Shown here in pieces: positions 38,451 through 64,000 of a DNA stretch of 64,000 bases (positions are counted from its first letter, which is position 1; every line of letters starts with the position of its first letter). Source of the stretch: Trichoplax adhaerens (Eukaryota; Animalia; Placozoa); contig NW_002060949.1 of NCBI RefSeq assembly GCF_000150275.1, positions 3,602,449-3,666,448 on the forward strand, given 5' to 3'. The notes below the pieces were generated by a model that did no database searches, had not been told where the DNA came from, and saw only the letters and a program-made list of their open reading frames with translations. The position numbers were made by a program, and so were the translations under genes.

Positions 38451-38869
38451 GCCGATGAAAATGATCTTTTACTTGTTTTGGCTGGTGTTGATGTTTTGAA
38501 CTTTGATGGATTTTGGTGCGTAGAAGTGCCCATACGCAGATTTTGGCTTGGACTAGTGTATGAATTTGCAGTGATGACTCGATCTCTACCAGTACTGCAA
38601 TACAGTTACTAGCATGGAATAGACGAGTAGTGGATTTCCAGTACAGTACACTGAGTACAGTGGACTACAGTGCTGTACGACGGACATACGGACGTAGTCC
38701 TACGTCCAGTACTCTGTAGAGTACGTACCATGGTTAGTTGACAGGCTTTGACGGAAATGAACGAATTACGCAGGCGTATTCCGCCAGAAGCGGAAGTGCG
38801 CATCCGCATTCCGTTCCATTGGGTAGTTTACTGGGCAGTGAGCCTCTAGTGTCTGTTGACGAGGTTGTA

Positions 38870-40400: not shown

Positions 40401-40477
40401 GTTGGGGGCAGTGGTAAAAGCAAGTTGATACGTCAACAGTTGCGTGTTGGCAGATTGCAGTTGGAAGTGGTGCAACA

Positions 40478-43400
40478 ATGGCTTCCGTAAGCGCGTTCAC
40501 ATACTTCTTCCTCTCTTGGATCCTCTATCAAGCCAATGGAGCCACCTTTAAAGATCGAGAAAAGGTACTGTAACTTGATTTCTACCTGTCGGAAGCAAGT
40601 GGTAACACTTGGGCTTGAAGAACACGACTTGATTCGACTTTCATTTCTCCCTATATTTAGATTACCATGTATGTGAATAAAGTGGGGCCTTACTTTAATC
40701 CACATGAAACTTATCATTATTATTCTTTGCCCATTTGCCGTCCTCAAAAGGTAATTCAATCTCGTCTATTCCATTCCATTCACGGTTATCTTTTCGTCAC
40801 ATTAGCACTTTTGCCACCGTAGACTACTGTAGGGTAGACATCGATAAGGTATCTTTTGATCCACCATCGATACAATCAAGATGCTTTCTACACTACATTA
40901 GCCGACAGCAGCATAGAAGAAATCTTGTACACAACGAGTTTTGCCATCGTAGACTACTGTAGGGTAGACATCAGTAAGGTATCTTTTGATCCACCATCGG
41001 TACAATCAAGATGCTTTCTACACTACATTAGCCGACAGCAGCATAGAAGAAATCTTGTACACAACGAGTTTTGCCACCGTAGACTACTGTAGGGTAGACA
41101 TCAGTATGGTATCTTTTGATCCACCATCGATACAATCAAGATGCTTTCTACACTACATTAGCCGACAGCAGCATAGAAGAAATCTTGTACACAACGAGTT
41201 TTGCCACCGTAGACTACTGTAGGGTAGACATCAGTATGGTATCTTTTGATCCACCATCGGTACAATCAAGATGCTTTCTACACTACATTAGCCGACAACA
41301 GAATAGAAATCTTGTATACACAGACACAACGAGTTTTGCCACCGTGGCTCATCTTGTTGCAAGTACCGTAGACAATCGAATAAATTGAGTCGATTCCATC
41401 CACTTGATGTTAGGTCAGAAAGACCAATCGACAGTCAATCAATGTACTATGGCGATGGAATCACTGTCTACAGCACTACAGATTGCCATCATTGTACAGT
41501 ACAGCTACTTTTTGCTATCAATCTAGTTCAATCCAGGTTACCATCTTTTCATTGAAATCAATTCAACGCCTACTTGCTTACAAACTTTTATTGCATTTCA
41601 ATTCAAGGTGGAACATCGCAGTTTAACGTTAGGTGAAGTCTTGAAAGGGGATCGAATGGCTGTATCATCCTTTAACATCCGATTTCGAGGTTTGTACTCT
41701 ACTCAACGGACGACATATCCAGTCTAGAGCAATCATACTGTACTATCTTGGCCATCGTTGTTCATCTCATCTAGTCTTGACAAACGTATCAAGACCAGCT
41801 AAAAAATTGCAATCAATTGACATCATTTCATCAAGCATAAATAGAATAGCACTTTCTTCTATTGATACCATAATATACAGACAAATCATTTACTGTAGTA
41901 CGTTGACATTCACTCTAGTCTTGGTACTAATCAATTAATTAGGTTACGAAATGACAATAATGTTGATACACTAGCGGACGCTTTTCAAAATCCATGCCAA
42001 TGAGTAGCAGTGATTATTCATCGACGAGAACTATCCTGCAAAACAAATCAATCTATCAGCTATACTGCAGTACATCACTACCATGTTGATATTTCTACAA
42101 ATGTTAGGCTTAACCTAATACGATTGAATCAATTTGTGCGCTCAAAATGGAAACTATTACCCACAATTGAATGGAATAGTTACCAATGGATAAATCATCA
42201 TACCTGTCGTTGTCATTTATATCTTGTAACTGATCTCCTACAACTACACTACATGACCAACAATATCCCTCATAACCAGACTAGACTTCAAGTAGATCGT
42301 TGCTACTGACTTGCAATGGACAATTTTCATGACTTGTACTATACTGTAGGCCTATCGAAAAATGCCATCGATCATCCCGTCTTGATATTCTACATCGCAA
42401 TGACTAAAGCTATTGCCATGTTCAATTAGCTAATGGACAGTCTTACTATCAATTCTTTTTTAATCCAACATCAATTATTTCTTACAAATGGCGACATATG
42501 ACGTTGTTATATTATCCAACTGATGTCCTCTATACAAATCACACTATCCTATTCAACTTTTTTTTTCAATCCAATTAGGTCATGTGAATGTCTTGTATCT
42601 AAACTAAGGATTGTACTACCAATCCATTTTATCGAAAGTTGTACCATGATGATAGATGATAGTATAGCAATGTGTTCAATACAAGTATGAATGGATGAAA
42701 TCACCGTATAAAATGGAAAATACACCAAGTATCCATATTTGCCAAAAAATTAGTACACTCTATTGACAGAAATGACGATAGTACTGTCATAAAGTAGCCA
42801 AGAACTACATTGTAATGCATATCTCATGGGTTGATTTGCAATATTAATTACATCTGCCTTACATACAAAGTATGCAATATTCTATTAAAATTAAATCTTC
42901 TTACAAGCAATGCCCAAGATCTACTTTTATCAAGGATGTAATATACCTAACTATACTCATCAGTTCATTCATTCACCATATCAGTAAGATAATGTATTAA
43001 AACCATATTTTCATCCAATTAACCCCTTCAATAGGTTCCAACTTCCTGCTGTTGAATTCGATCATCATGGCACGATACCTCTTGTTTGTTCTACATTGAC
43101 AAATTCTTCAAACAATAATATAGTAACACCTTGACCAATTTTATCTTACAATCAACATCGTCTCGATATTCCATCCAATTTCTTCCATACTCTATCAAAG
43201 TATTTTTAAAATAGATTCAATTTCCTTTTAGGCAGTATTAATTAATACCTGATATACAATATCAAAGTGTTAGTTTTGATTTCAATTATCCCAAATTATA
43301 ATGGACACGTATTTCTTTAACGCTTACAGAAATGACCGTGGTAGTCTCAACTTGCTTGTAAAAGTACAGTAGACAGTATTCTACTTTCTTCTTGTATAAT

Positions 43401-46634: not shown

Positions 46635-49600
46635 ACTTGTATATGGTCTATGTTAGAGTCAGATAAATTTTATACTGCTGTATTGATTTATCAGCGAATC
46701 TAATGTAAGTAAACTGTTTAGTGTAACCGTCATTCAAGATTTGCTATTGATGAAATGCTATTAGGCGAAACAATTAACTTCATCCAATTGGGCATAATGA
46801 ATGGCTGATTACATACTTAGCTGTAATTATAGCTTATTAACACCTTTAAGAAAGTTTTATGTAGCTAATAAATTCAAGTTGCAATAGCATTAATCTTTCA
46901 CAGTCATATGGGATTTTCAGTGGAAAATAATAACATATTATATAACTACAGTGGTTCTGTACGTAGTCGCTATTTTATACCTAGATTGTACGCTCGTGTA
47001 GTTAAGGTATTCCCCTATTTGAATACATCTATGAATTGTTTGGATGTACGAATTCTGTGTATTTACTACCTATTACCTGTTGGTTCGTAAAAATTAGAAT
47101 GTTTGGACAGTTATAGTATCTGATTACCAATCATTTTAAGCGAAATCGCCTTGTTTGTTGTCGAATCTGTATTTCACTTGGCGTTGCGGTAGTTTGAGCA
47201 TCGTTATGAATCTATTCTTAACCTTTTTAAATTTGTTATTGCTGCTGCTACAACTACTGTACAAATAATCCAAATAAAATGAGATTGAATAAATCTTTGT
47301 ATAGTATGATTATTCATTTGGCTATATCTTTCTATGTCGAAAAAGCACTATGGGAAATAGTATTCTAATGGACTTATATATATATATATATACTGTATGT
47401 GCATTCGTTTCTATTGTTTGTATCACGGTAATATAATATAAGTTGTAAGACTACGGTAGGTATTGTATCTAATTGATAATTAATAAATATTACGAACGTA
47501 GTGAAATCTTAAGTAGAATATTCGAACATATCTGGCAGGCTGTGAATAAATGGAAACGATTAAAAATATCGAAATAATTTTTGGCTTCATAATGCGCAAC
47601 TTAAAACTTTCGTCTTTACTGATAATTGTAACGCTACAACGATATAAATGATCTACTCTGTTTGTGCCTTTAATAATGCTGTGGTTTAAAACTAATGTAT
47701 ATGTCACCGAGATAGGTCCTCAGATAAGTAGAAAATAAGGTCACGCAGAAAATGTTATCACGTACTGTAGATTACACTGGAGATGTTACACAAACGAGGA
47801 ACTTATGTTTGCTATGCTTTCATTTGACAAGACGCATATTGTTCTGTTCTATTACAGGTGAGAAGGGATATAATTTCACTCATTGATATAGTTAGTAAAA
47901 ATTATTATCGCTGTCTTATTACATAATATTGATATTACCCATATACTGTACATTAGAAATCTGTAATCTCATCTCTATTATAGAAAGTCAAGTACATTAA
48001 CGATCGACAATATGGCATTACTAGTTTTCGTTACTTATTTGTGAACATAATTGCAATTATTAAATAAGAATAGATCAATATAAAGAAGCAATATCAAATA
48101 TAACAGAATCTACACTTAATATCGGGATATCACCGGCAAACACAAAGTCAGATAGCAAGAATACTTTATACGTAAACCTGAAACAGAGTATAACTAAATT
48201 ATTAATTAAGGATCATAACTTTAGTTATTAAACAAGAACGATGAATTATTCTAATCAAACATCCCGATAAACATATCATCATATAGCCTAAATTCGTTTA
48301 TTAAGAATAAATAATTACGGTATAATTTACGGAAGTAAAGTAGAGTTGAATAAATATTATGGAGTCTGCACTATAGTAATCATAAGTTTCTTCTAGAGTT
48401 TTTGGTTGCTTGTTATGCAAGGCATATAGAGAAAAAAAGTTATCATAACTTCAAAGAATAATATATAGTAACTAACATACTAAGTTTTACGTCATAGCCG
48501 ATTCAGAACAATGAGTTTAACTTCATTCTGATCAACTCTTGTATTTACAAGAAAATACAGTAATTTAATTTGTAATACGCTTACTACTCCTAGTTTGCGC
48601 TTGTTTACATTTATTTTCCGGTAAATAAATAAGTCAGACAAAATCGACTGTATCTACCTGCAATAAGCTATCAATCAATTGATTATTAACTCAACTTTAC
48701 TGTAGAATACAATTTGAATTTTAAATTAATAATCAAAAATTACGATAAGTTAAAGCTTATTTATTTAGACTCTTCTAGTTGTACAAGGTGTCAAACATTG
48801 ATATTTCATGCTTCAGTATCGTTCAATTGTTTATTAATAAACATGAACGCAAGGGCTACATTAAAATGATACCAAAATAAAATTAAAATGATCGTTATAA
48901 TTATTGTTATTATTATTATTGTCACAGTATTACTGAAACTCCCATCACTTAAAATGACAGATGTCATATATTGATCTTTCTATATCAAATAGCGTTTTTC
49001 ATTCTTTCACAAGTAATTTCATTTACAAATTTCAGGATGATGCAATAGCATATTCTTTACCTAGATAACATGAGAGATAGAGTGAGATTAGCCACTTCTT
49101 GCCGAAATTTGGCACTCTAACTAATTTAAATAGACAAGAAATCCTTTAACTTTTATACCTACATCAATTCAGCAAGACTGATTTAATTTTTAATCAATAT
49201 ATTGCAATACGTCATAAATCTGTTGTAAACTTTAAGCTTTCATCCAACTTCTTCTTCTGGAATATTGTAAATTATAAAACTTTTGTTAATAATATTAATT
49301 TTGCTTACTTAATTTAAGCCATTTGATCATCTATGCGGTAATATGATATTAAATGATACAAGAAGTTCGCAGTAGAATACTATAATATATCGATACAGTA
49401 TGAAAAATTAATACTCTTATTCAAATTAATGACGTTATTATCGTACCTTTCGAACTTACTCCTACTACTCGACTGTTAACTACTACAAGTCATGATTGAC
49501 AGCTAACTTGTAAACACATAGATGTTATTAATAAAACCAAAATTTAAGTGGATGGTCTACAAGTATATCTATTAAAAATTAATAGATTAAATAAGTCCGG

Positions 49601-50275
49601 CTATTCAAATTATATTCGCTAATATTAAGTGCCAATGCATTATTAATACAATCCATAAACTATCGTAGTTATTGAATAGTTCTAATCACCTGCTCCGGAA
49701 AATTATTTTTAATAAAGTTTACGTTAATGCAAGTCCCACTACCGGTATGTGATACAACGATTGTATTTTCGCCTTACTTATTATTTCTAATTGAAAAACT
49801 GTCTCAGTTCTGTGATAATTATTAATTCTAATTAATTTATAACAAGTATCTTTATAGGAATAGAATTAGTATCAGTGGCATCAATAATGATTACTAATCA
49901 AATATCCTAACTATACGATTCCGTAAGTATAAAGGTATAGCTATAATTGGATAGATTGGAATAATAAGGATAAATAGCATCCAACGTTAGACAACCTCTT
50001 TTACAATAATAGATTATTATTCCAAGTAATAGATATATAAGAATACATGATTATAGTAAAATCATAATATAACTTGCTATCAGTTCCATAAGCTTAGTAA
50101 AGTAATTAAGGCTAGAGTGGATTGAATTGACATCGTTTTCATCACCAAAGAGGATACGAAGACAACGTTGGATCGATTTTAATAGGTCACATCAAGAGAT
50201 TTTAATCTCTTTTTACTCAATCTTAATGTTATAGACAAATATAATCTATCATTGATTGCCGTTCAATTGGTCATT

Positions 50276-51115
50276 ATGCGAATCAAAAATAAGCCAATAA
50301 CGAGATGTAATGGCGATGAAAAACTTCGGCCGAAAGTAAAGACACTTTTTGATAAAGGTCGACTCTGGATAGCTTGTTTATTAGTTTATGGCTTTTTTAA
50401 AATGATGTACATGATTATTATGTCTAAGATTTGGTATCCAAGAGCTTTCTGCAGAGCCGCAAAATTAATGGATAAAGTTGTTGAAGATGCTCGCCAACGA
50501 TCTAAACTATCAAAATGGCAGGTGATGACAAGGAACTTTTTCAATAAACAAAATTTACTATCATTAGCTACGGATCCTGATCAAGTTGCCATCTTTGGCC
50601 GACTATCAGTTGGCGATTTAGCACCACCTGGTGTCTTATATACATTAGATAAAGAAGTATACAATTTTCATCAGATATTTCAACAATCGCCTATGAATAT
50701 CTTTGTCTTAAATTTCGGTTCTTACAGTTGACCACCGTTTCGTTTTAATATCGATAAATTTGCTCAATATGCTCATTGGTACGGTCAAAAAGCTGAATTT
50801 ATTACTATTTATATCGCCGAAGCGCATACTACTGATGACTGGTATATACCTGATTTGAATGATGGAGCTGGATTATGCTTTCATGCGCCAGATACGCTAG
50901 ACGATAAAATACGATTAGCCAACAATTTTAGAAATGATTTCTGTTACAAGTTACCTTTTTATGTCGATTCAATGCAGAATGATTCGATGAGAGCTTATTC
51001 AGCCAAACCAGAGCGGATATATATTGTTAAGGACGGCAGGATTGCCTTCAAAGGTGGTCCAGGTCCATTTAGTTATGCACTTGATGAAATAGATGATGCT
51101 TTACGCAAGCTTTAA
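50276..51115 (+). CDS. DIO: Iodothyronine deiodinase-family selenoprotein, copy A (279 aa, Sec at TGA 50729-50731)
   Basis: ORFs 50252-50731 and 50855-51115 share a frame and are joined by one TGA. Motifs are VLNFGSYS-U-PPF, IYIAEAH..DDW, YVDSMQN..AYSAKPERIY and KGGPGPFSY. There is an N-terminal hydrophobic anchor and a downstream SECIS. Confidence 0.93.
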
Positions 51116-51137
51116 ATATCGTATACTTAATCTTACT

Positions 51138-51219
51138 CTATTTCCATAATATGAAGCTACTAGCTCGAAGCTAAAATTGTTCTTAGAGAGCGCTAGCGGA
51201 TGTTGAAATATGGAAATAG
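51138..51219 (+). promoter_or_regulatory. SECIS element (type II) of deiodinase copy A
   Basis: Helix I is CTATTTCCATA/TATGGAAATAG. The core is ATGAA (51151)...GGAT. Helix II is GCTACTAGCTC/GAGCGCTAGC. The apex has GAA plus a CTAA/TTAG mini-helix. Confidence 0.85.
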
Positions 51220-54200
51220 TGAAGAATTCGATCTAATTTGTCGGAACTACCAATTCTATAATGTCAAGAAAGTCTTGTTTAAGAGTATAGGCATAGATGA
51301 TACATATATGTAGTGCATTATGAATTACAATTATTATCGCAATCACTTATTAGCTGCTTGACACATTCAAAAAAATTTTCTTTAATAGGGGCACTATCAA
51401 CATTAACTGTAGATTAACAACTTAACAGCTAGCTATGAAATCTAATTCGAAAGCAAATTAAATACCAAACTCGTTTTAGGTACTTTAGGTGCTTAGTGTG
51501 ACTCTATTTTGCGACTGCTTATATTTATGCCACGGTATACCCTTATAGTAAATTTCTATTAGCTATCACGTACCAAAATTGAACCTAGTATCTTCAGTAT
51601 AGAAAGACACTATACGTAGAAACGTTAGATCATGTAATCGGTTAATTTTATGAGAATCTTTTCGAAAATATAAGTAATAAGCAATTTGTATTATTACAGC
51701 TGCCCCACTTTGATGTTATGTACTGTGTTAATATTCACGTATTATCAACAGATAGTTGAGAATTGATATGTTGATGATTGAAACTTTCTCGTGTTATGAA
51801 TATTGATAATAAATTTTAACTGTTTCTCTGTCAATAAACAGTCTAATTGATGAGTATTGTATTGGTCATTTATTAATAATGCTGCTTTGTTATTTTGGAT
51901 TACTTTATACTTGAGAAGTGATGTTTAATTTAGAATACTTTTCTATGGATAGTTTAATGTGAGTATATGCATGTACAGTAATGAGTCTTAAATCAACAAC
52001 TAGGCTACATGTTTGTTTTTATAGCATTTTAGAACGAATGCAAGGAAATCTCAACTGTAAATGGTATCTACTAATTCTCATGAAAGCATTCCCATCATTC
52101 ATTTTTTTAGGAATGTATTAATCACCAGATAACCTTTGTACAAATCTAAATTGGATGTAATGAATATAATTAGGTTATCGTAGGTATACTTAGAGTGGTA
52201 GTTAATGGAAAGTCAGCTAAATAATAATGATGATTCAGGATTTCTGTAATTGCGATTAAGATACCATTTTAATATCCTTTAAGGTGACCTCAGTTGTTAT
52301 AGTTTTCATAATCTAACCATTTAATTATACGCTAAATTGCTTTAGCTTACTTTGATAATATTATCATCTTGACGTATATACAGTTGGATACCTTTATAAA
52401 ATAGGATTCAGCATTTGCTTATTAAATTATTACTGGATATATTCTTTAAAATTTTCGAAGGCAGATTATAACCTAGAAATAAGCTGTTTTCAACTCAGTC
52501 ATTCATCCTCAGAATATGTTAATGAGTATCGTATCATATGAACTTGATTACTTTATGAAATGGGATATATATGATTACTTAGATAATAATTGCGATAATA
52601 GGTTATGTGGAGCTACAAGATTTTAGTAGATATTTCTGTTAAATTTAAATTACATCGTTCCACCTATACATTTCTAAATGGGGATCATTGATGCACTAGT
52701 ATTACAGTAGTATACTACATATAAAGAGAAGGTATGAAGTTAAAATCGCACAGTAGCTGGAATTGAATAATCATTACTATCGATTATATCATCTAACCAA
52801 GCCTGCTACTACTGTAGCTTAAACGCTACGGTAGGTTAGGCCGCTTGCCTATGGTAATTATGTACATAGAACTGGTCATCTAATGATTATTTATCGTTAA
52901 ATTTCCTTTATTTTCACATCTTCCTAACGCTGGACTATAATACATTTCTGGAGATGGTATAAAACGAATATGTATATACTCATATATATATAAATGATTG
53001 AATTAATATTTATGTTTATCAGTGAAGAGCTTTTACTATAACAATCTATTGCTCTATCTCCGTTGAGAGCTATACGAAACCTTGGATTTGGTTTATACTT
53101 TAGTCTACTACTGTCTTGCTTGTATCCTTTAAAAAGATAAATCCGTTTAGTAGTTATGATGCATTAGCAAGATTTTGACTTTTTTTATAGAGTAGTCCCT
53201 GATATGATACAGGCGTATACAGTACAGTGTAAACATATGCATAACACTACAGTACTAATTTCCTCGCAATTTTGCATATTTATTTTTATTTTATACCACT
53301 CTAACTTGATTTTCTCAAGTACTGTAGTGCATAACTTACTGCAATGTTGCTTCGCTGCTAATAAATACTGTAGTATTTATGAAATTTTACGAATAGTAGT
53401 GTGTCCTAATTTTAATTATAGCTGGATTTTTTTAGGATTCTAATTTTGTAATCAAAACCAAGCCATTATATGTAAATGCAAATCAAAAATTATAGGAAAT
53501 AACTTTTTCAAGGTAACTTTATTTGCTATTCATTTTTAAAGATTAGGTTGAATTTACAACATGGTCGTGGTATGGCTAAAACATAACATAAATAGTTTAA
53601 GAACTTTATTGAATGTATTTTAATTATGATAACTATCCGTAGTTGTATTTAATCATTAAACTACACACTGTAGGCCAACATGATGAGATAGTCAGGTATA
53701 CACGATTACTAGACTATCCGTTACTACAATCCAATCGAGTTTGATCTCGAGTTAATAACTTCATTATATCATGTAGAACTATCTACATCAGCAAATTCAG
53801 TCTACAAATTGATAATGACATTCCATTACGCAATTATTATTATTCTACAATTAGATCGTCTAGTATAAAAAGATGGGTGCTATTTCCTGTATACAATATA
53901 CTTGTAATGTAATCCTTTTTTTTTGGTTTGCCTTGCAGCAATTTGACAATCCTAGAATATTTTTAGATTAATCTCATTGATCAATTGAAATTAAAAGACA
54001 ACGCTCGAAGCTTGCCTGTCTTTACCAGTATGATTGGAATCAATTTCGTTTTCACAGTATTAAGTGAAATGATCGATTTTGGCATGGCAGACAAGACGTT
54101 GCAATTTGGATGATTTTTGTCCTTGTGCGACTTGTTCATGAATCGTTTCCTGTCACCTAGACTGTGTAAGTCAATGGACCTGGATTACCAAAATAAAAGT

Positions 54201-55270
54201 TTCAATTCTATACTGTATATGTATCATTTCGGCAGTACAGCATCGACCAGTTGATGACGCCATTTGCACGCGAATAGGCAAACACCGTAATTAAAATTAG
54301 AAATAATGGATCAAAATTTTTTGGAGCCTATTTTTATTCTAACATCTAATCTTTCGGACTGAATAAAGAAGAGACTGAGATTAATTGCTAGCAGTGACCA
54401 TTGATCATCTGTATATTAGCTTCGTTAATATAAAAAATATTTCATTGATGATGATAATTAAGTCGTGATGCAAGATCGACAAAGTGATTCAGTTTTCATG
54501 GCCATGGTGGTCAAGAGTACGATCCAAAGTTGAAGAAGTGAATCTTTTGTAATTCAAAGTTATCACCACGAAGCATAAATAATTATGAATTAATCGGTCG
54601 ATGGAAGCTGCATTTTCTATATAATCATGTATGATTGTAGGTTAATTAATTCATTAATTCATAAGACGTGGTTAAATTATTGAATAAGAAATCCCATTTA
54701 CTATTACACTACATAGACGTGAACTATTCATGGATGATTTGAAATTTTTGCTAGGAGTTGTCATTAGTTCCAATTGGAATTGTAATGGACTAGAGTTTAT
54801 GCAATAGTATTGAATAACGATAGAAAGAGTTATAAATAATACTCAAATTGACACTAACAACGTTGACGATAATATCGCATTTCAACCAGTAGAATCATTT
54901 GGAGCTCGCCCTGTGAGCAATCCAGCCCATCTTTTTCACCTCATCAGCTTGCAACCAGGTTTACAAAGATGGGTAGATGTGAAGCGAGTGACAAGAAATG
55001 GGTTAAAAGTAGGAAATTACAACGGCAATAAAATAGACTATTCACACAAATAACTAATTTTGCTTTAGTTTACATATGGATTGAATTTGCATCATGATTA
55101 TCAATTGCTTGTGAAGACGTCCGGTGCATATTGAAATGTCCACGACACCAGTTGGTCATACCGGTTGCACAGTAGAAGTGAGTACAATAGTATGCTATAC
55201 CGTCGATGTACTGAACACGGGGGTAAGGGTTGAAAGCTTTTCACCGCCAGACGTTTCGCGTGACATTGTG

Positions 55271-55642
55271 TTACTTCTTATTGGCATTGGAATTGGCATT
55301 GGAATTTTTAATAAGTCGTCGCCTGATGGTGCTGGGATGTAAAGTTTTGCCTGTTTTATCCTTTAACATCGCTGCTAATTCCCCACTAGCTTTAAATGGT
55401 GACTCTTTCACCGCTTCCAGGATCAAATCGTCCTCCTCGGGGGTGGTTTTGCGTTTCCTACCCGTCTTGAATTTTTGAATTTTAAAGGAACGCTGGCCTT
55501 GAAAGCGTTTGACAATCCGTTGAATAGTGCGTTTACTAACTTCCATTCGATCAGCGATCTTCTGTCGAGTCCAGCCAGCTTCATCAAATGCCATAATTTG
55601 TGCTCTATCACAGCATGTGAGTAGCTTATGTTTAGGAGCCAT
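55271..55642 (-). CDS. Tc1/mariner-type bipartite HTH (paired-like) DNA-binding-domain-only protein, 123 aa
   Basis: HTH1 is DRAQIMAF..GWTRQKIADRMEVSKRTIQRIVKRF. The linker TGRKRKTT is GRPR-like. HTH2 is EDDLILEAVKESPF..ELAAML..LHPSTIRRRL. The protein ends NSNANSNANKK* with no DDE/DDD domain. Confidence 0.75.
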   Translation of the reverse strand: MAPKHKLLTCCDRAQIMAFDEAGWTRQKIADRMEVSKRTIQRIVKRFQGQRSFKIQKFKTGRKRKTTPEEDDLILEAVKESPFKASGELAAMLKDKTGKTLHPSTIRRRLIKNSNANSNANKK

Positions 55643-55760
55643 CAAGTTTAAAGCGATTAGTAGCAATTGGACAAGGAAAGCAATGGCAGAAAGAAGAAAC
55701 GCCGCTTGACCCAGTGCTAAGGAAGGACAAGATTTTGCGCACGACGGATCATTGCGGTGC

Positions 55761-55768
55761 TTTATATA
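55761..55768 (-). promoter_or_regulatory. Candidate TATA box for the HTH mini-gene
   Basis: TATATAAA on the minus strand about 120 bp upstream of the ATG at 55642, in otherwise GC-richer context. Confidence 0.45.
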
Positions 55769-56860
55769 CCTTGCTATCCGTACAAGTGGACACGCTATGG
55801 TACACTCTGACAGCCTACTGTATAGTATTCTATGCTGACGTTGTCATGCCATGTGCTAAGCTTGGCACAGGATGGTATGGCCGATCGCAGAAATGATGTC
55901 ACCTGGAGATCGGGTTATTGGCTAATTAGGGAAAATGATGTCACTATGGCGCGCCGAGAGTACTGCCTTCAGCTGCAAGGGCGTTGTCACGGGTGACATT
56001 CTTTTTGGTGGATACAGCCCATACCGTACTACGTGTTGGCCCACCGTACTGTACTGTATTGTAGAGAGTCAGTACTAAAAGAAAGAAAGATGAGACTGCG
56101 CACAGTACTCTGCTTGAACTGTACAGTACGGTACTATACGGTGTAGCCTGTCCACTAAAAAGATGATGTCACCCGTGGCGGTTCACTGCTGAGCTGTGGG
56201 CACTACTTGAGGCATGGAATGGCGACATCATTTTCAATAAATTCATCGCTCAGATTGACCTCATGAACAATATCATTGGTCACAGGACTAGTTATGGGCA
56301 ACTCTAGTTTACAGTAATATTAAGGTTAAGCAACAGTTAGCCTGGTTCAACTGAAGCCAATCAGGTCATCCGATTGCAACGCTCTGTAGCAGCTGATCTG
56401 GAGCCATATCTGACTGATTGCAAATGTTGCAGTTAAGTTGGATAACGACAACGATTGCGCAAGTGCACATACCAGTGGCAGGTATATAGTAACAGTACTG
56501 TACGTCATCATCAAAAATATTTCTGACTGTAAAGCGTAAACATCAACCCCAGAAATATCTTGGGCTATAGTCGACTTTGCATATAGCTAATAATTCCTAA
56601 TAATTCTACGAATGATTAGCAATCGCAAGACCTACAGTACATCGTAACAACAGTCTAGTAGACACTAAAAGCCGTCAAAAAGAAATGGAGAATTAACTAC
56701 TTGTTGTTATACATCGATGTAGTATAGTATTTGCTCATCAAGCCTACTCCCGCTTACCACCAACATAACACTTGTGTACAGTACACGGTAGCACACCCAA
56801 CTCTGCCCAAGCTCGCCTTCAATATTCAGAATACTGTAGTTCTTAATCCATTGGGGGTAA

Positions 56861-57673
56861 ATGGCAATGCATCAGAAAAAGGAAACCAGCCTTGGCTGGT
56901 TCATGTCTGCATATTTCATGATGTATGGATTATTCAAACTTATCAAATACTTTTTAATATTAAGGTATTACTATCCTGCTTCTACAAGCCATCTTCAGAA
57001 ACGGATGAGACCTATCGTGCGAAAAAACTTGCAAGATCAAAAAGTAACCTTATGGTCTTATTTAAGATCCAATTTTTTAAATAAGCAAAATCTTCTCTTT
57101 CTTGGAGAAAGGTTTAATTTTGCCTCAATAAACTTTCTTAAAGTTGGACAACAAGCTCCTAAAGGACGATTATTTACACTTGATCAGCAACAAACTGATT
57201 TACAAAACATTTTTAATCAAAGCGCCAAAAAAATTCATGTCTTAAACTTCGGATCCTATTCTTGACCTCCATTTCGATATGAAATCGATCGCTTTATCGA
57301 TCTGGCTGGTCGATTTAGTAATCGTGTTCAATTTAACACTATTTATATTAAGGAAGCTCATGCCGCCGATGAATGGGCACTACCAGTAACGAATGAAAAT
57401 CTTGGCGTATGCTTTCTTCAGCCTAAGAAATTAGAAGCTAGAATAAACATAGCTAAAGAATTTATTAATCGTTTCCAATTTCAATTACCGTTTTTTATCG
57501 ATTGTATTGAAAATGAAACGATGAAAGCATACGACGCTGTACCAGAACGATTATATGTAGTCGATGATGGAAAAATCGTTTATTCAGGCGGTCCAGGTCC
57601 ATTTGCTTATAGCCTAGATGACATGGAACAATTTTTAGAGAAATACGTCGTAGAAGGACAGAAATCGTCGTAA
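56861..57673 (+). CDS. DIO: Iodothyronine deiodinase-family selenoprotein, copy B (270 aa, Sec at TGA 57263-57265)
   Basis: The frame stays open after the TGA: PPFRYEIDRF..IYIKEAHAADEW..DCIENETMKAYDAVPERLY..SGGPGPFAY..VEGQKSS* (TAA 57671-57673). Confidence 0.93.
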
Positions 57674-58000
57674 GATTCGGATAAACTCTACGGATAATTT
57701 AAATATTTATATGTGTCATTCGAGTTACCACTAATTGCAATAGATAGCATATACATTACAGGCTTGGTTGAATTGTCCTTTCAACTTCAGTAACTAAATA
57801 GTGATGGCCTTAAGAAATTCCAGGGTTGTCGTACAATGTTGAGCTGTATGACGAAACAAGAAATTGTATTTAAAGCGTATTACGCACAGGAAAATAACTA
57901 TTAATTATTATTTTAAAATTTATATCTTGTAACGTACTAATGGATGTGCAATGCAATGCACATTATGCATTCGTGGCTTTGTTGGTGATTAGATAGCTTT

Positions 58001-58078
58001 TACGTGATATAATGAAGTTATTTACTTAAAACCAAACTGGAATTGGATTGTAATAACCGAAGATCAATTAATCATGTA
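58001..58078 (+). promoter_or_regulatory. SECIS element (type II) of copy B
   Basis: Helix I is TACGTGAT/ATCATGTA. The element reads ATGAA (58012) GTTATTTAC TT AAAA CCAA..TTGG ATT GTAATAAC CGAA. Confidence 0.85.
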
Positions 58079-59823
58079 CATACGTATATATGTCTATCTT
58101 TACCCAACACGCTGGCTTACATTGCTTTTAGCGAGTTAAAATGCAATTACAGATATCTAATGATCTATTGAATGAAATTCTTTTCAGCTATTGACACGTA
58201 TTGTATTTTTAGTTAGTCATAGCTTGTTATCAATGTCACCCTTGCAACGAGTGGTAATAAAGATACCAACAAAAATTCCTTCAGGCGAGTTATTATCTAT
58301 TTGCATTACAACAATTTAATAAGCAATGAGAAAATATTGTTATCGACAGTCGATTTACATAAAATGATTTCGTAAATATTGACAAGTTACAATGCTAAAA
58401 GTAACATAGCTAAGCTTGTAGTAAATTTGATGTGATTACTCTAGATTCCGTATGACGGCAGAAATCTTGTGAACTACTCTTTTTCGTTAAAGTGAAAAGA
58501 AAATTCGACAGATCATGTTTAAAAATACAACTACGTGTAAATTCAATTCATTGAAGTTAAAATACAACAAAATGTTACGACGATACCAATAAAATTATGT
58601 GTATATCCCAAATTGCAAAGCTGTACCATTTGAAATTTATTTAGTGCAATAGTAAGAGGAAGGGTATATATTATAAGTTTCAGTGAAGGATTGTGGAATC
58701 GTGGACGCTCGCTTCCATGCGAGCGGGTTCGAATAGTGCTTGTAAAATATCGATTTATTTAATTTTAAATATCTTTATTTATAGTACCGATGAAGAATAA
58801 GCAAACAGGGAAAACGTATTTTAGCTAACGCTTCATTTAAAGTAGTGTATGTTTCGAAAACATGAACGAATATACTTACATCGGTTATTTAAGATTTAGA
58901 ATTAGGATAAAATAAATTTATAATTTTGAACGACTTTTAGTCTAGGATAGACTATACTGTATTACATAATGTTTATTAATCTTTATAATATAAATTAAAT
59001 AAGATTAGAGTAGAGTAGATTATACAAATAGAGGTGCAAATACTTACTAGTAACTTAGTACTGTCTGTAGATTCGTGGCACTGTACATCTACCGCAAGTG
59101 AATTATAAGACGGACATAAACAATGGGAAATCTAGTAATGCTTAAAGGAAAGACCTCAGGAATACAATGATATTTTCCTAGTTTAGAAAGACTAGATAGC
59201 AGAAAAACTTAGTACAGTAATTACCATTTATCATCTTTTTCAGTCCTAGTTCTGCAAGACTCTACATCTATAGTACGAATCTCTCCCAAGTCCCTTAATA
59301 CTTCTCTTCAATATCTCCATGTTACGCACTATACAGTATCTAAGCAACTAGAAAGTTCTAAATAGCTGAAAAGTCTTTATATGCTATTAAGATCTGGTAG
59401 TTACTAGACATGAAAATTAAAAAATATTGATTACGTTATAGTGCATAAAGTCTTTCTGTAACTTAATTCTTCCTAATATAGTTGTATGTCTACATGGATA
59501 CTCGCATACGTGTATATATAACCACTATGTAGTCAGTCATTAACCTTAAAACTTTAAAGTCGAAACCAGACTATTTGGTAAATACTCCAATGAACTAAAC
59601 TCTTTTAAAGAGATTTCTCGACGATATCTTTATTTGTGGATTACTTTGAAAATTAGATTTACGACAGGATTATGATAAATAAAGGTAATACAGTATACCC
59701 TATAAATATTTTGACATTTAATCAATTACAGTTTATCTATATCCTTACTTAGACAAGAGTAGTTATATTTAGTTCGCTAGATGGAGTAGTATACGTAGAT
59801 TACTATGTTGAGATAGATAAATA

Positions 59824-59905
59824 TACAGGATTAAAATAATAGATCATCAGTTGTTACAATTCAATCAAACTTGGTCTCAAGTAAAAACTTCATTTAAGTT
59901 CTGTA
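59824..59905 (-). promoter_or_regulatory. SECIS-like element of copy C, with apical GAGA instead of AAAA
   Basis: The minus strand reads TACAG..ATGAA GTTTTTAC TT GAGA CCAA GTTTGA TTGA ATT GTAACAAC TGAT..CTGTA. It is alignable to the copy B and D SECIS. Confidence 0.7.
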
Positions 59906-60184
59906 AACGTATCTGTCATTAAGAAGTCTACGAATACTTCTCCATTCTGATACTACAAAATTTAAAGTAATTCCGTAATTACTGATATAAATGCAATTTA
60001 GTTCTCATGTTAGCCTTGTAGCTCATGGCTACAAGATATTAATTTAAAAAAAAGTAGAATAACATTGAAAGACTAATATCGAGCTAGGATTTTAAGTTTC
60101 TATCGAATTGCATTCCATAGTATTTAATCGTGTCTTAAATGACTCGTATAAGTATTTAAATTATCCGTAGAGTTTATCCGAATC

Positions 60185-61003
60185 TTACGACGATTTCTGT
60201 CCTTCTACGACGTATTTCTCTAAAAATTGTTCCATATCATCTACACTATAAGCAAATGGACCTGGACCGCCTGAATAAACGATTTTTCCGTCATCGACTA
60301 CATATAATCTTTCTGGTACAGCGTCGTATGCTTTCATCGTGTCATTTTCAATACAATCGACGAAAAACGGTAATTGAAATTGGAAACGATTAATAAATTC
60401 TTTAGCTATGTTTATTCTAGCTTCTAATTTCTTAGGCTGAAGAAAGCATACGCCAAGATTTTCATTCATTAATGGCATTGCCCATTCATCGGCAGCATGG
60501 GCTTCCTTAACATAAATAGTGTTAAATTGAACACGATTACTAAATCGACCAGCCAGATCGATAAAGCGATCGATTCCATATCGAAATGGAGGTCAAGAAT
60601 AGGATCCGAAGTTTAAGACATGAATTTTTTTGGCGCTTTGATTAAAGATGTTTTGTAAATCAGTTTGTTGTTGATCAAGCGTAAATAATCGTCCTTTAGG
60701 AGCTTGTTGTCCAACTTTAAGAAAGTTTACAGTAGCGAAAGGGAACTTTTCACCAAGATGAACAAGAGATTGCTTATTAAGAGTATTGGATCTTAGAAAA
60801 TGCCAAGTAGATATTTTTCGGCCTTGCAAATCTTTCTCACATGCAGATTTTATCTTTTTCGGATTATAATAAGGATTATCGATAGTAGGGTAGTGGTACT
60901 TTATTGTCAAAGCATATTTGAGTAATCTGAAAAATCCAATGATCATGAGATAGGTAGACTTGAACCAGCCATAGGAGGTTTCCTTTTTCTGTCCAGTCGT
61001 CAT
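60185..61003 (-). CDS. DIO: Iodothyronine deiodinase-family selenoprotein, copy C (272 aa, Sec at TGA 60595-60593)
   Basis: ORFs 60593-61012 and 60185-60478 are in frame across one TGA. Motifs are NFGSYS-U-PPF, YVKEAH, PERLY and GGPGP. The first ATG is at 61003. Confidence 0.92.
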
Positions 61004-62280
61004 TGGCTCCAATTATTAAATGATACCGTTATTGGTATACTAAATGAATATTAATAGTGCAATATACTGTGTGTAAGCGTACAGTATACTGAAAGTAACA
61101 GCTTTGATCAGTTCTATTAGTTTTGGATATTACTCTGACTTTACCTGCTAAACTAGTGCTTAGCCATTACAGTGTCGATTAGACGATGGCCAAATTTCTA
61201 GTTGTTCATTATTACTGCTGTATCCGTATCTATCTACGGTATATATAGTATAAGATAGATTTATATATATATAGTGAGTATACTGATAGTGAAATATTCT
61301 ACTTACTTAATAGTTAGTAAACAAATCGGCGTAGTATCATAACTGTGGGTCTATTACCATACGGTACAAACTAGATTTCTTATAATAATAGTTGATATAC
61401 AGAATTTCTAGTAAGACTTTTACCAACATGTTCTGTAGCACGCCGTCCGTCGTGCCGTATGTCTCGTATCTCAGACAGTACCACCGTGCTGAGGCTGGTT
61501 TTTGGACTCCTGAGTCGACATCGAGCCAGCCAGAGACCCCAACATAAGCGATACCAATATTCTTCTTTTTTTTCTTCACTACTTCCCGTTGTGTTTCCAC
61601 CATTATTAGTCGTTAACGTGGGCACGATAGACTTTGATGCACTAGTAAGCTTACCAAAATCGAATCTTTCTTTACCAAAGCAGCGCATCGTAAAAAGGAG
61701 GGGTTTAGCTAGTACTAGCACTGGGTTTAGTTCATAGTTTGAAATGAAATCGATCTACCGTACTCTATTTTAAGGCATAACTCAGTCGTTTCAATTTCAA
61801 AGAAATCAATTAGGCCTATAATCTGGACCTGAAATGATGACATCCCTCATCCTGCTGTCCTTCCGTTTAGTATGTTTTAATCATAAGTATACGATATCGT
61901 GCAAAATGTCTGACTTCAATAATAGCGAGCTAGGGACATACTAATATAATATAATGAATGGGTCACTAGCTCTACAAACTACAGTATTTTGAAATACTAG
62001 AATTGCGTGTACTTCTTACTTTAGCATTACCGTACTATAGCAGAATTACTTTAGTATACTCTACAGCTATGCAAAATCTTTTAAAAGCATCTTTATTTGC
62101 TGACTATATACAAGTACGGTTAGTTTGCTTTGCAACACGATAGTAATAGTGCTAAAGAATAATCCAAAGAATTTTTAAATTTATCAATTATAGATCTTTA
62201 TTAATTCGTTAATATAACTGGAATAACTATTAATTTTGAATAAAGCAACATAAACTTGTATGCTGAGATAGATATCGTAT

Positions 62281-62355
62281 ACATGACTAGTAGATTATCG
62301 GTTATTGCAATCCAATCCAAGTCGGTTTTAAGCAAATAACTTCATTATATCATAT
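62281..62355 (-). promoter_or_regulatory. SECIS element (type II) of copy D
   Basis: The minus strand reads ATATGAT..ATGAA GTTATTTGC TT AAAA CCGA..TTGG ATT GCAATAAC CGAT..GTCATGT. Confidence 0.85.
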
Positions 62356-62767
62356 TAACGTAATCTATCTATTTCATTAACACGTTTACGAGTGTATCTC
62401 GGTTTCAAAGCTAACCCTAAATTAAAAACTATTACTGTATCAGGGGGCTAAGAGGATAACAATTTAATCTTTACTTTAGTTGTACAATCGTGTCAAGCAA
62501 TTATATCCGTTGTAAGATAGAAAGTGGGTCAAGGTCTCTTCAACCTGCTATAAACCGTAATTAGGGTTATTCTCAGTCAGTTAACGAGCTGATCTATATT
62601 CATTTCTTCTAATAATATTAAAGACTGGAAGCTGAAAAAGATTAATACTGAGCTACACGTTTAAGTTTCTATGTAATTCTATTTTACAGTATCTAGTTAT
62701 TTCTTATAAATGACTTTCATAAACATTTGAATTATCTGTATAGTTTATCCGAATCTTATAATAATTT

Positions 62768-63574
62768 CTATTTTTCTACAACGTATTTCTCTAAAAATTG
62801 TTCCATGTCATCTACACTATAAGCAAACGGACCTGGACCGCCTGAATAAACGATTTTTCCGTCATCGACTACATATAATCTTTCTGGTACAGCGTCGTAT
62901 GCTTTCATCGTTTCATTTTCAATACAATCGATAAAAAACGGTAATTGAAATTGGAAACGATTAATAAATTCTTTAGCTATGTTTATTCTAGCTTCTAATT
63001 TCTTAGGCTGAAGAAAGCATACGCCAAGATTTTCATTCATTAATGGCATTGCCCATTCGTCGGCGGCATGAGCTTCCATAATATAGATAGTGTTAAATTG
63101 AACACGATTACTAAATCGACCAGCCAGATCGATAAAGCGATCGACTCCGTATCGAAATGGAGGTCAAGAATAGGATCCAAAGTTTAAGACATGAATTTTT
63201 TTGGCGCTTTGATTAAAAATGTTTTGTAAATCAGTTTGTTGCTGATCAAGTGTAAATAATCGTCCTTTAGGAGCTTGTTGTCCAACTTTAAGAAAGTTTA
63301 CAGTAGCGAAAGGGAACTTTTCACCAAGATGAACAAGAGATTGCTTATTAAAAAGATTGGATCTTAGAAAATGCCAAGTAGATATTTTTTGACCTTGCAG
63401 ATTTTTCTCACATTCAGATTTCATCATTTTCGGATTATGATAGGGATTATCGATAGTAGGGTAGTGGTACTTTATTGTTAAAATACATTTGAGTAATCTG
63501 AAAAATCCAATGATCATGAGATAGGTAGACTTGAACCAGCCATAAGAGGTTTCCTTTTTCTGTCCAGTCGCCAT
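62768..63574 (-). CDS. DIO: Iodothyronine deiodinase-family selenoprotein, copy D (268 aa, Sec at TGA 63166-63164)
   Basis: ORFs 63164-63583 and 62768-63079 are in frame across one TGA. Motifs are NFGSYS-U-PPF, YIMEAH, PERLY and GGPGP. The first ATG is at 63574. Confidence 0.92.
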
Positions 63575-63836
63575 TGGCTCCAATTATTAAATGATACCGT
63601 TATTGATTCACTGAATGAATATTAATAGTGCAGTATACTGTGTGTAAGCGTATACTGAAAGTAACAGCTTTGATCAGTTCTATTAGTTTTGGATATTACT
63701 CTGACTTTACCTGCTAAACTAGTGCTTAGCCATTATAGTGTCGATTAGACGATTAGACGATGACGAAATTTCTAGTCTATCATTATTACTGCTGTATTCG
63801 TAATTGCGTATCTATCTATCTATCTACTCATTCTAC

Positions 63837-63866
63837 TGTACAGTACAGTACAGTACAGTACAGTAC
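63837..63866. repeat. (TACAG)n microsatellite upstream of copy D
   Basis: TGTACAGTACAGTACAGTACAGTACAGTAC. Confidence 0.8.
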
Positions 63867-64000
63867 ACCAGCGATTCGTAGAATGGAGGGGTTTACCTAG
63901 TGTTAGTACTGTAATGACACGACACACGAATGTAGCTTATAATATTAGACTAGTTTATTAAGAGAGAAGAACAGTCAAGAGTGACTTCTAGATGAAGACT

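What the first reader, a model, noticed from the sequence alone, without database searches (positions are those of the whole stretch)
50276..63574. Cluster of four UGA-recoded deiodinase selenoprotein genes hidden from ORF callers
Seen: four intronless CDSs (+,+,-,-) in 13 kb, each interrupted only by an in-frame TGA at exactly the catalytic position (NFGSYS-TGA-PPF). Each keeps the EAH, PERxY and GGPGP motifs and an N-terminal membrane anchor, and each is followed by a SECIS-shaped hairpin. Established: DIO1-3 are thioredoxin-fold selenoenzymes that need a 3' UTR SECIS. Inference: this is a lineage-specific dehalogenase array in an apparently thyroid-less early animal, possibly acting on dietary or environmental iodo/bromo-aromatics or iodotyrosine-type signals. 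Invertebrate deiodinase expansions may already be reported, so novelty needs a literature check.
Basis: partly seen in the sequence, partly recalled or inferred. Interest (0 to 1): 0.85.

Follow-up and report, generated by a model that had tools for sequence, protein, structure and literature searches.

The report
Known Trichoplax selenocysteine deiodinase gene cluster
The four genes are real, transcribed selenocysteine deiodinase-family genes of the placozoan Trichoplax adhaerens, but they belong to a six-gene cluster catalogued in 2012, so the finding is correct and not new.

Summary
Observation confirmed. Four intact, intronless ORF pairs (+,+,-,-) are each split by one in-frame TGA inside NFGSYS-TGA-PPF. 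Their C-terminal halves match Pfam T4_deiodinase at 92-97 bits. Each gene is followed by a SECIS-type hairpin. RNA-assembly contigs cover three of the genes and their 3' UTRs, cross the TGA unspliced in g2 and g3, and leave the intergenic DNA bare.

The genome is Trichoplax adhaerens. Jiang et al. 2012 (PMC3473315) already reported 11 Ta.DI selenoproteins and this tandem cluster of six (Ta.DI_f to Ta.DI_k, scaffold_7). The window holds four of the six; two lie beyond its end. An earlier report of this scan reached the same verdict for another copy, Ta.DI_b.

- A seventh, decayed copy with its own SECIS relic.
- A canonical type-2 SECIS 35 nt after the first gene's stop codon.
- A GAGA-for-AAR SECIS variant in g3, shared with g6 and the relic.
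- Ta.DI_e looks like an allele of Ta.DI_g.
- The catalytic halves show signs of gene conversion.
- All copies have Pro at the positions of vertebrate His219 and Arg275.

Substrates remain untested.

The parts
50276..51115 (+). g1 (Ta.DI_f by position and strand): intronless deiodinase-family CDS, Sec codon TGA at 50729-50731
   Evidence: Translation. C-half matches PF00837 at 92.6 bits. Six-frame match of 110 bits with one TGA.
51136..51219 (+). g1 SECIS, type 2. The AUGA core starts at 51151, 35 nt after the stop. Helix I has about 11 bp, and a GAAG bulge carries the AA.
   Evidence: Covariance-model hit at 51146-51207, 34.7 bits, E 1.6e-5; this sequence was not used to build the model. Fold. 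Alignment.
53710..53769 (-). SECIS relic of the decayed seventh copy (GAGA variant)
   Evidence: Covariance-model hit of 44 bits, with whole-genome E 1.1e-4. 73-80% identical to the SECIS regions of g2, g3 and g4.
54109..54561 (-). Decayed deiodinase pseudogene. It reads NFGSYS-TGA-PPW and then runs into several stops and frame breaks. The N-terminal part is missing.
   Evidence: blastn gives 66-69% identity to g2, g3 and g4; tblastn shows internal stops.
56861..57673 (+). g2 (Ta.DI_g): deiodinase-family CDS, Sec codon TGA at 57263-57265
   Evidence: RNA contigs at 57129-57648 cross the TGA without a joint in runs X11 and X4.
58007..58067 (+). g2 SECIS (type 2, AAAA bulge plus CCAA/UUGG mini-stem), 338 nt after the stop
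   Evidence: this sequence was used to build the model. It lies inside RNA contigs of four runs.
59603..60184 (-). g3 3' UTR. The poly(A) site is near 59603, and an ATTAAA/AATAAA signal lies 31 nt upstream of it.
   Evidence: A poly-T loose end at 59603 in run X9, plus contigs over 59603-60182. Signal positions.
59840..59898 (-). g3 SECIS-like element. The AUGA/UGAU core is kept, but GAGA replaces the AAR, helix II has one mismatch, and the reference mini-stem has one mismatch.
   Evidence: Covariance-model hit of 36.1 bits, E 7.7e-6 locally and 8.7e-3 genome-wide; not used to build the model. The variant 59861 T>C in runs X4 and X9 restores the CCAA/UUGG mini-stem.
60185..61003 (-). g3 (one of Ta.DI_h, i or j): deiodinase-family CDS, Sec codon TGA at 60593-60595
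   Evidence: X9 contig 60210-60818 crosses the TGA unspliced. dN/dS against g4 is 0.18-0.35.
62291..62350 (-). g4 SECIS (type 2, AAAA bulge), 422 nt after the stop
   Evidence: used to build the model. Inside RNA contigs of X4, X5 and X9. Against g2, one helix II pair changes from A-U to G-C, a compensatory change.
62768..63574 (-). g4 (one of Ta.DI_h, i or j): deiodinase-family CDS, Sec codon TGA at 63164-63166
55271..55666 (-). Tc1/mariner-type HTH ORF (transposon remnant) between the pseudogene and g2
   Evidence: Pfam HTH_32 at 49.3 bits, HTH_23 at 35.8 bits and HTH_Tnp_Tc3_2 at 31.6 bits.

Best explanation
The stretch holds four members of the tandem Ta.DI_f-to-k cluster of Trichoplax adhaerens. 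The cluster has six genes, plus one dead copy. Each live gene is an intronless mRNA for a protein of about 270 residues with a hydrophobic N-terminal segment and a thioredoxin-fold deiodinase domain. A UGA in the motif FGSYS-U-PPF is read as selenocysteine, because a type-2 SECIS hairpin in the 3' UTR recruits the Sec insertion machinery.

Shown here: family membership, transcription of g2, g3 and g4, the absence of splicing at the UGA in g2 and g3, SECIS inside the 3' UTRs of g2, g3 and g4, purifying selection after the UGA, and presence of tRNA-Sec and SepSecS in the genome.

Inferred: the selenolate removes a halogen reductively, or performs a related two-electron redox step, as in DIO1-3. 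The substrate is probably not bound as thyroxine is in DIO2 and DIO3. All copies have Pro where Dio3 has the carboxylate clamp Arg275 (Lys in Dio2). They also have Pro at the relay residue His219 and no equivalent of Cys168 or Cys239.

The array grew by placozoan-specific tandem duplication. Gene conversion keeps the catalytic halves of g2, g3 and g4 (and probably g5) about 95% identical.
For: - Family: PF00837 matches. The C-half aligns to Dio2 9h48 and Dio3 4tr3 from the residue after Sec, with Tyr197, Glu200, His202, Trp207 and Glu259 kept. Residue roles are taken from PMC11592359.
- Organism and prior report: proteins named Trichoplax adhaerens or Trichoplax sp. H2. The genome has 11 DI loci, all with one TGA, and their scaffold and strand pattern equals Table S1 of PMC3473315.
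- SECIS: ten elements fit one structure. 93% of cells pair, against 25-57% in slid controls, and 5 pairs show compensatory change. Genome-wide, the model hits only downstream of DI genes.
- RNA: contigs of four runs from four studies cover only the genes and their UTRs. No run has depth in 58600-59399 or 61400-61599. Contigs bridge the TGA in g2 and g3, and g3 has a poly(A) end at 59603.
- Selection: dN/dS is 0.14-0.39 in the half after the UGA.
- Machinery: tRNA-Sec at 78 bits and a multi-exon SepSecS gene.
- Expansion: tree.
- Gene conversion: between g2 and g3/g4, dS is 0.39-0.46 in the N-half and 0.10-0.11 in the C-half.
Against: - There is no protein-level evidence for Sec insertion: no ribosome footprints, 75Se labelling or peptides.
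- The runs are assembled contigs, most labelled RNA only by a guess. They cannot show expression level, and paralogs about 95% alike can blur which copy a contig comes from.
- The g3 SECIS lacks the AAR motif and scores only 36 bits, so g3 may be poorly decoded.
- Rfam finds no SECIS here at all.
- Enzyme activity and substrate are pure inference.
- The hydrophobic segments of g2 and g3 are only moderately hydrophobic.
Confidence: 0.9

Rival explanations
1. g3, and perhaps other copies without a canonical SECIS, is a young pseudogene. It is transcribed, but translation ends at the UGA because the GAGA element cannot recruit SBP2. Its intact frame only reflects recent gene conversion from g4.
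For: In g3 the AAR is replaced by GAGA, helix II has a U-C mismatch, and the reference mini-stem has a mismatch. Jiang et al. found strong SECIS after only three of the six genes. g3 and g4 are 95-96% identical, so there has been little time for decay. A dead copy with the same GAGA variant lies nearby.
Against: g6 carries the same GAGA variant as its only SECIS hit. It is an old, divergent paralog (dS about 1.8) whose post-UGA half has dN/dS 0.14-0.15. g3 against g4 gives dN/dS 0.18 in the post-UGA half. g3 mRNA is polyadenylated and includes the element, and the alleles in X4 and X9 restore the mini-stem.
Confidence: 0.25
2. The proteins are true iodothyronine or thyronine-derivative deiodinases. 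They would process thyroid-hormone-like compounds taken up from algal food, as an early form of thyroid hormone signalling.
For: Family membership, and conservation of Sec, Ser167, Tyr197, Glu200, His202, Trp207 and Glu259. From PMC8222990: amphioxus deiodinases act on TRIAC.
Against: The carboxylate clamp Arg275 (Lys in Dio2) and the relay residue His219 are Pro in all nine copies. No thyroid hormone receptor or ligand evidence was examined here.
Confidence: 0.25
3. The enzymes are not dehalogenases at all. They would be peroxiredoxin-like selenium redox enzymes, acting on peroxides or thiols, that merely share the deiodinase fold.
For: From PMC11592359: deiodinases carry a peroxiredoxin motif and resemble Ahp1-type peroxidases. 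One 268-aa relative among the top representatives is named AhpC by its source. Among the 155 relatives aligned (5 plus the 150 representatives), 125 have Pro at the His219 position.
Against: The deiodinase-specific insertion with EAH..D.W is fully kept. No resolving cysteine is conserved, which a 2-Cys peroxiredoxin cycle would need.
Confidence: 0.15

Closest known systems
Ta.DI_f to Ta.DI_k cluster of Trichoplax adhaerens (Jiang et al. 2012, BMC Genomics 13:446, PMC3473315)
   Same: The same object. The paper counts 11 DI selenoprotein loci and six in tandem on one scaffold with strands +,+,-,-,-,+. The remaining loci are distributed 3, 1 and 1 over other scaffolds, as found here.
   Different: The paper reports strong SECIS after only three genes (g, i, j) and no pseudogene. 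Here I add a canonical SECIS after DI_f, GAGA-variant SECIS after g3 and DI_k, a seventh decayed copy, RNA support, and the view that DI_e is an allele of DI_g. I could not settle which of g3, g4 and g5 is h, i or j, because the figure is not held.
Vertebrate iodothyronine deiodinases DIO1, DIO2 and DIO3 (structures 4tr3/4tr4 for Dio3, 9h48 for Dio2)
   Same: Pfam family and the Sec in FGSxx-U-PPF. Also the EAHxxDxW edge of loop-D, the relay residues Ser167, Thr/Ser169, Tyr197, Glu200 and His202, Glu259, an N-terminal hydrophobic anchor, and a 3' UTR SECIS.
   Different: Pro replaces His219 and Arg275 (Lys241 in Dio2). Tyr replaces Cys168, and there is no Cys239 equivalent. The genes are intronless and form an array of 10-11 paralogs.
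Tandem deiodinase clusters of amphioxus and Lottia (same 2012 paper)
   Same: Lineage-specific tandem duplication of Sec-type DI genes on both strands. Some copies lack a strong SECIS, and one gene has two SECIS. A Trichoplax DI on another scaffold also has two SECIS in tandem (L008).
   Different: The Trichoplax cluster is the largest reported, with six genes.

Membership tests
Iodothyronine deiodinase family (Pfam PF00837) | Profile match above the curated cut-off | tested here: met
   C-halves score 92.6-96.8 bits against a cut-off of 27. Six-frame matches across the TGA score 110-121 bits. The N-halves alone give no Pfam or PDB hit.
Iodothyronine deiodinase family (Pfam PF00837) | Selenocysteine (UGA) at the catalytic position in FGSxx-U-PP[FS] | tested here: met
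   The TGA sits directly before PPF. PPF aligns to Pro171 onward of Dio3 and to profile position 115.
Iodothyronine deiodinase family (Pfam PF00837) | Proton-relay and loop-D edge residues (Dio3 Ser167, Thr169, Tyr197, Glu200, His202, Trp207) | tested here: met
   These are invariant in nine Trichoplax copies, with Thr169 as Ser or Thr. Roles from PMC11592359.
Iodothyronine deiodinase family (Pfam PF00837) | Relay His219 and substrate clamp Arg275 (Dio3) or Lys241 (Dio2) | tested here: not met
   Both are Pro in all nine copies. Among the 155 relatives aligned, Pro stands at the His219 position in 125 and at the Arg275 position in 48.
Iodothyronine deiodinase family (Pfam PF00837) | Single N-terminal membrane anchor | tested here: inconclusive
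   Best 19-residue hydropathy is 1.94 (g1), 1.63 (g4), 1.33 (g2) and 1.28 (g3). No dedicated membrane-topology predictor was available.
Iodothyronine deiodinase family (Pfam PF00837) | Reductive deiodination of iodothyronines | not testable with these tools
   This needs an enzyme assay.
Eukaryotic SECIS element, type 2 | AUGA ... GA quartet flanking helix II, in the 3' UTR | tested here: met
   Present in all four elements. The elements of g2, g3 and g4 lie inside RNA contigs.
Eukaryotic SECIS element, type 2 | Helix II and mini-stem supported by covariation | tested here: met
   93.2% of cells pair, against 24.6-57.1% in slid controls, and 5 pairs change on both sides. The alignment was fitted to the model, so this leans towards the structure.
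Eukaryotic SECIS element, type 2 | Unpaired AAR about 10-12 nt after the quartet | tested here: met
   Met for three of the four: g1 has GAAG, and g2 and g4 have AAAA. It is NOT met for g3, which has GAGA, as do g6 and the pseudogene relic.
Eukaryotic SECIS element, type 2 | Match to the Rfam SECIS models | tested here: not met
   No SECIS family hit at E up to 10 or at the gathering score, even for the strong elements of g2 and g4. The Rfam blank is therefore uninformative.
Ta.DI cluster of Jiang et al. 2012 | Same species, same number of loci, same scaffold and strand pattern | tested here: met
   The genome has 105.6 Mb in 1414 contigs and 11 loci, distributed 6, 3, 1 and 1 with matching strands. 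Protein names confirm T. adhaerens.

The most novel reading that the evidence does not exclude
The GAGA element of g3 and g6 (DI_k), which has no AA dinucleotide in the bulge, is a working non-canonical SECIS class. Together with Pro at the thyronine-clamp and relay positions, the array would encode selenium dehalogenases tuned to non-thyronine substrates such as dietary halophenols or iodotyrosine-like compounds. That would make placozoans a model for deiodinase function before thyroid hormone signalling.
Probability: 0.3. Interest if true: 0.5.

Novelty: already known. Interest (0 to 1): 0.22.

Why it matters
The cluster is a published example of lineage-specific expansion of a selenoenzyme family in an animal without a thyroid. 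Confirming it shows that the scan recognises recoded genes correctly, but it adds no new kind of system. The increments are useful for re-annotation: SECIS elements for the copies said to lack one, a GAGA variant, a dead copy, an allele counted as a gene, and RNA support. They also give a cheap test case for how far the SECIS AAR motif can vary, and for what deiodinase-fold enzymes do outside thyroid hormone biology.

Tried and rejected
- Rfam gave no SECIS hit at E up to 10 on 49000-64000, or at the gathering score on the whole window. Its chance 'Afu_199 snoRNA' hit at 53689-53771 is in fact the SECIS relic.
- My first two pattern scripts for SECIS were too strict and found nothing. A looser one plus a covariance model worked.
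- The model found no SECIS after g5 (L012 1-4700, filters off). It also found none in the flanks of the DI genes in L007 and L009.
- The N-terminal halves alone match no Pfam family and no PDB chain.
Reads were laid on g2-g4. For g1 only an indirect hint remains: the runs hold more of 50200-60199 than g2 and g3 explain.
- The word-indexed protein search found only 5 hits, all fragments.
- A named phylogeny with DIO1, DIO2 and DIO3 was not possible. The representative library has no names, and PDB sequences cannot be passed on. The tree therefore only tests clustering of the Trichoplax copies.
Inside scripts the Sec codon was read as X.
- 'The TGA is a true stop and the two halves are separate genes' is rejected by the single frame, the profile match across the TGA, the SECIS and the selection after the TGA.
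- 'An intron removes the TGA' is rejected for g2 and g3 by contigs that cross it without a joint.
Full report
**1. Observation**

A degenerate pattern for NFGSYS-TGA-PPF matches five times in the window, against none expected. Four sites lie in frames with no stop other than that TGA:
- g1: 50276-51115 (+), TGA at 50729.
- g2: 56861-57673 (+), TGA at 57263.
- g3: 60185-61003 (-), TGA at 60593-60595.
- g4: 62768-63574 (-), TGA at 63164-63166.

All four keep EAH, PER[LI]Y and GGPGP. The halves after the TGA match Pfam T4_deiodinase (PF00837) at 92.6-96.8 bits, starting at profile position 115. A six-frame search of the whole genome matches across the TGA at 110-121 bits. The N-halves alone match nothing. 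Each carries a hydrophobic segment near the N-terminus, with 19-residue Kyte-Doolittle scores of 1.3-1.9.

The fifth site (54502-54531, -) belongs to a decayed copy. The stretch 54109-54561 is 66-69% identical to g2, g3 and g4, has several stops and frame breaks, and lacks an N-terminal part.

**2. Organism and prior knowledge**

The window is G000:C1408:3602449-3666448 of a genome of 105.6 Mb in 1414 contigs. The closest database proteins are named Trichoplax adhaerens (TRIADDRAFT_34769, partial) and Trichoplax sp. H2 ('Type I iodothyronine deiodinase'). UniProt calls the paralogs B3RXF2 and B3RXG3 'Iodothyronine deiodinase'.

Jiang et al. [quoted passage not shown] Their Table S1 lists the scaffolds and strands:
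- Ta.DI_f to k on scaffold_7, strands +,+,-,-,-,+.
- Ta.DI_a to c on scaffold_5, strands -,+,-.
- Ta.DI_d on scaffold_6, strand -.
- Ta.DI_e on scaffold_1003, strand +.

My genome search finds exactly 11 loci, each with one TGA, in that distribution. Six lie on C1408 with strands +,+,-,-,-,+. Three lie on C1410 (-,+,-), one on C1409 (-) and one on the 3.4-kb contig C937 (+). The finding is therefore four of the six published cluster genes. g5 and g6 lie 1.8-5 kb beyond the window's end. By position, g1 is DI_f, g2 is DI_g and g6 is DI_k. Which of g3, g4 and g5 is h, i or j I could not settle, because the figure is not held. No later paper on placozoan deiodinases turned up.

**3. SECIS elements**

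Rfam finds no SECIS here. I located elements by pattern and built a covariance model from six clear ones: those after g2, DI_e and g4, two after the gene in L008, and one after the gene in L003.

Hits the model was not trained on:
- 53710-53769 (-), 44 bits: downstream of the dead copy.
- g6, 39 bits.
- g3, 59840-59898 (-), 36 bits.
- g1, 51146-51207 (+), 34.7 bits.

In the whole genome the model hits only downstream of DI genes at E up to 0.01. Over the ten elements, 93% of cells pair, against 25-57% when partners are slid, and five pairs show compensatory change. The alignment was fitted to the model, so this leans towards the structure.

The g1 element starts 35 nt after the stop. It has an 11-bp helix I, the AUGA/GGAU quartet, an interrupted helix II, a GAAG bulge and a mini-stem. 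It is a canonical type-2 SECIS for a gene that the 2012 paper does not list among those with a strong SECIS.

g3, g6 and the relic carry GAGA where g2 and g4 carry AAAA, so they have no AA dinucleotide. g3 also has one mismatch in helix II and one in the mini-stem. A variant seen in two RNA runs (59861 T>C) repairs the mini-stem mismatch.

**4. Expression**

Contigs of four runs from four studies were laid on 56800-62799. One run is on record as RNA; the other three are RNA by the tool's guess.
- Coverage is confined to g2 plus its 3' UTR (56800 to about 58469), g3 plus its UTR (59603-61200) and g4's UTR and 3' end (from about 62041). No run has any depth in 58600-59399 or 61400-61599. That pattern is what RNA would give and genomic DNA would not.
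- Contigs cross the TGA with long flanks and no joint in g2 (57129-57648, runs X11 and X4) and in g3 (60210-60818, run X9).
- A poly-T loose end at 59603 marks the g3 poly(A) site, 31 nt after a poly(A) signal.
- All three SECIS elements lie inside the transcribed 3' UTRs.
- These are assembled contigs. They show presence, not level, and paralogs about 95% alike can blur which copy a contig comes from.

**5. Selection, machinery and evolution**

dN/dS in the half after the UGA is 0.14-0.39 for all pairs. Examples are g6 against g2, g3 and g4 (0.14-0.15, dS about 1.8) and g3 against g4 (0.18). Selection downstream of the UGA means it is read through. The genome has a tRNA-Sec gene (78 bits, gathering score 47) and a SepSecS gene.

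Between g2 and g3/g4, dS is 0.39-0.46 in the N-half but only 0.10-0.11 in the catalytic half. This points to gene conversion of the 3' part.

DI_e (C937) is 98.3% identical to g2 over 1.77 kb, flanks included. The RNA runs carry DI_e-type variants at g2's SECIS: 58042 A>C, and +GTACA at 58075. DI_e is therefore most likely the other allele of DI_g, which would leave ten loci.

A profile of the nine catalytic halves finds 3895 relatives among 1.84 billion representatives. In a FastTree of 147 sequences, eight of the nine Trichoplax halves form one clade (support 0.86). Its only other members are P0001, P0006 and P0008, which are named Trichoplax, and P0007, which I did not look up. The cluster genes g2, g3, g4 and g6 form a subclade (support 0.98). 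DI_d falls elsewhere with weak support.

**6. Active site**

The alignment to Dio3 (4tr3) and Dio2 (9h48) runs from the residue after Sec. Together with the nine-copy alignment, it shows that Ser167, Ser/Thr169, Tyr197, Glu200, His202, Trp207 and Glu259 are kept. These include the relay and loop-D edge residues described in PMC11592359.

Four positions are not kept:
- Cys168 is Tyr.
- The His219 position is an invariant Pro.
- Cys239 has no equivalent.
- The Arg275 position (Lys241 in Dio2), proposed to clamp the substrate carboxylate, is an invariant Pro (GGPGP).

These states are common in the wider family. Among the 155 relatives aligned (5 plus the 150 representatives), 125 have Pro at the His219 position and 48 have Pro at the Arg275 position. 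They mark a non-vertebrate subfamily, not a Trichoplax oddity.

**7. Verdict**

The identity (Sec-type deiodinase-family genes with SECIS in a placozoan) and the lineage-specific expansion are supported. The proposed substrates cannot be tested here. The finding is already known from the 2012 catalogue, and an earlier report of this scan reached the same verdict for Ta.DI_b on other DNA of this genome.

The halves were searched apart and the joined-protein search was left out.

Noticed in passing
L012:2218-2267 (G000:C1408, about 2.2 kb beyond the window's end): g5, the fifth cluster gene (minus strand), is cut by a 50-N assembly gap right after EAHAAD. The sequence after the gap is unrelated. 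My model finds no DI-type SECIS in the 2.2 kb downstream.
   Followed up: partly
L001 (G000:C937:874-3400) against L002: Ta.DI_e on the 3.4-kb scaffold is 98.3% identical to g2 (Ta.DI_g) over 1.77 kb, flanks and SECIS included. It looks like an allele, so the 2012 count of 11 may be 10. A unit of about 350 nt upstream of the gene is present three times in L001.
   Followed up: partly
L008:671-732 and 940-1002 (-) (G000:C1410, near 820.7-821.0 kb): Another Trichoplax DI gene has two strong SECIS elements in tandem in its 3' flank, 497 and 767 nt after the stop. This resembles the double SECIS the 2012 paper reports for amphioxus Bf.DI_b.
   Followed up: no
window 55271-55666 (-): A 131-aa ORF with Tc1/mariner-type HTH domains (HTH_32, HTH_23, HTH_Tnp_Tc3_2) and no transposase catalytic part. 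It lies between the dead DI copy and g2 and is probably a transposon remnant.
   Followed up: partly
window 56861-57262 against 57266-57670 (g2), and the same halves of g3 and g4: Mosaic divergence. Between g2 and g3/g4, synonymous divergence is about four times higher in the N-terminal half (0.39-0.46) than in the catalytic half (0.10-0.11), which suggests gene conversion of the 3' part.
   Followed up: partly
window 58282-58443: One contig of run X4 skips 160 nt in the distal 3' UTR of g2, with ends AG..CT (not GT-AG on either strand). It is probably an indel polymorphism or an assembly artefact.
   Followed up: no
window 18425-20488 (-): A 687-aa uninterrupted ORF with no Pfam match. This is unusual for an intron-rich genome.
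   Followed up: no
window 38001-42000: G+C rises to 0.42-0.47 against a window background of about 0.33-0.35. The cause was not examined.
   Followed up: no
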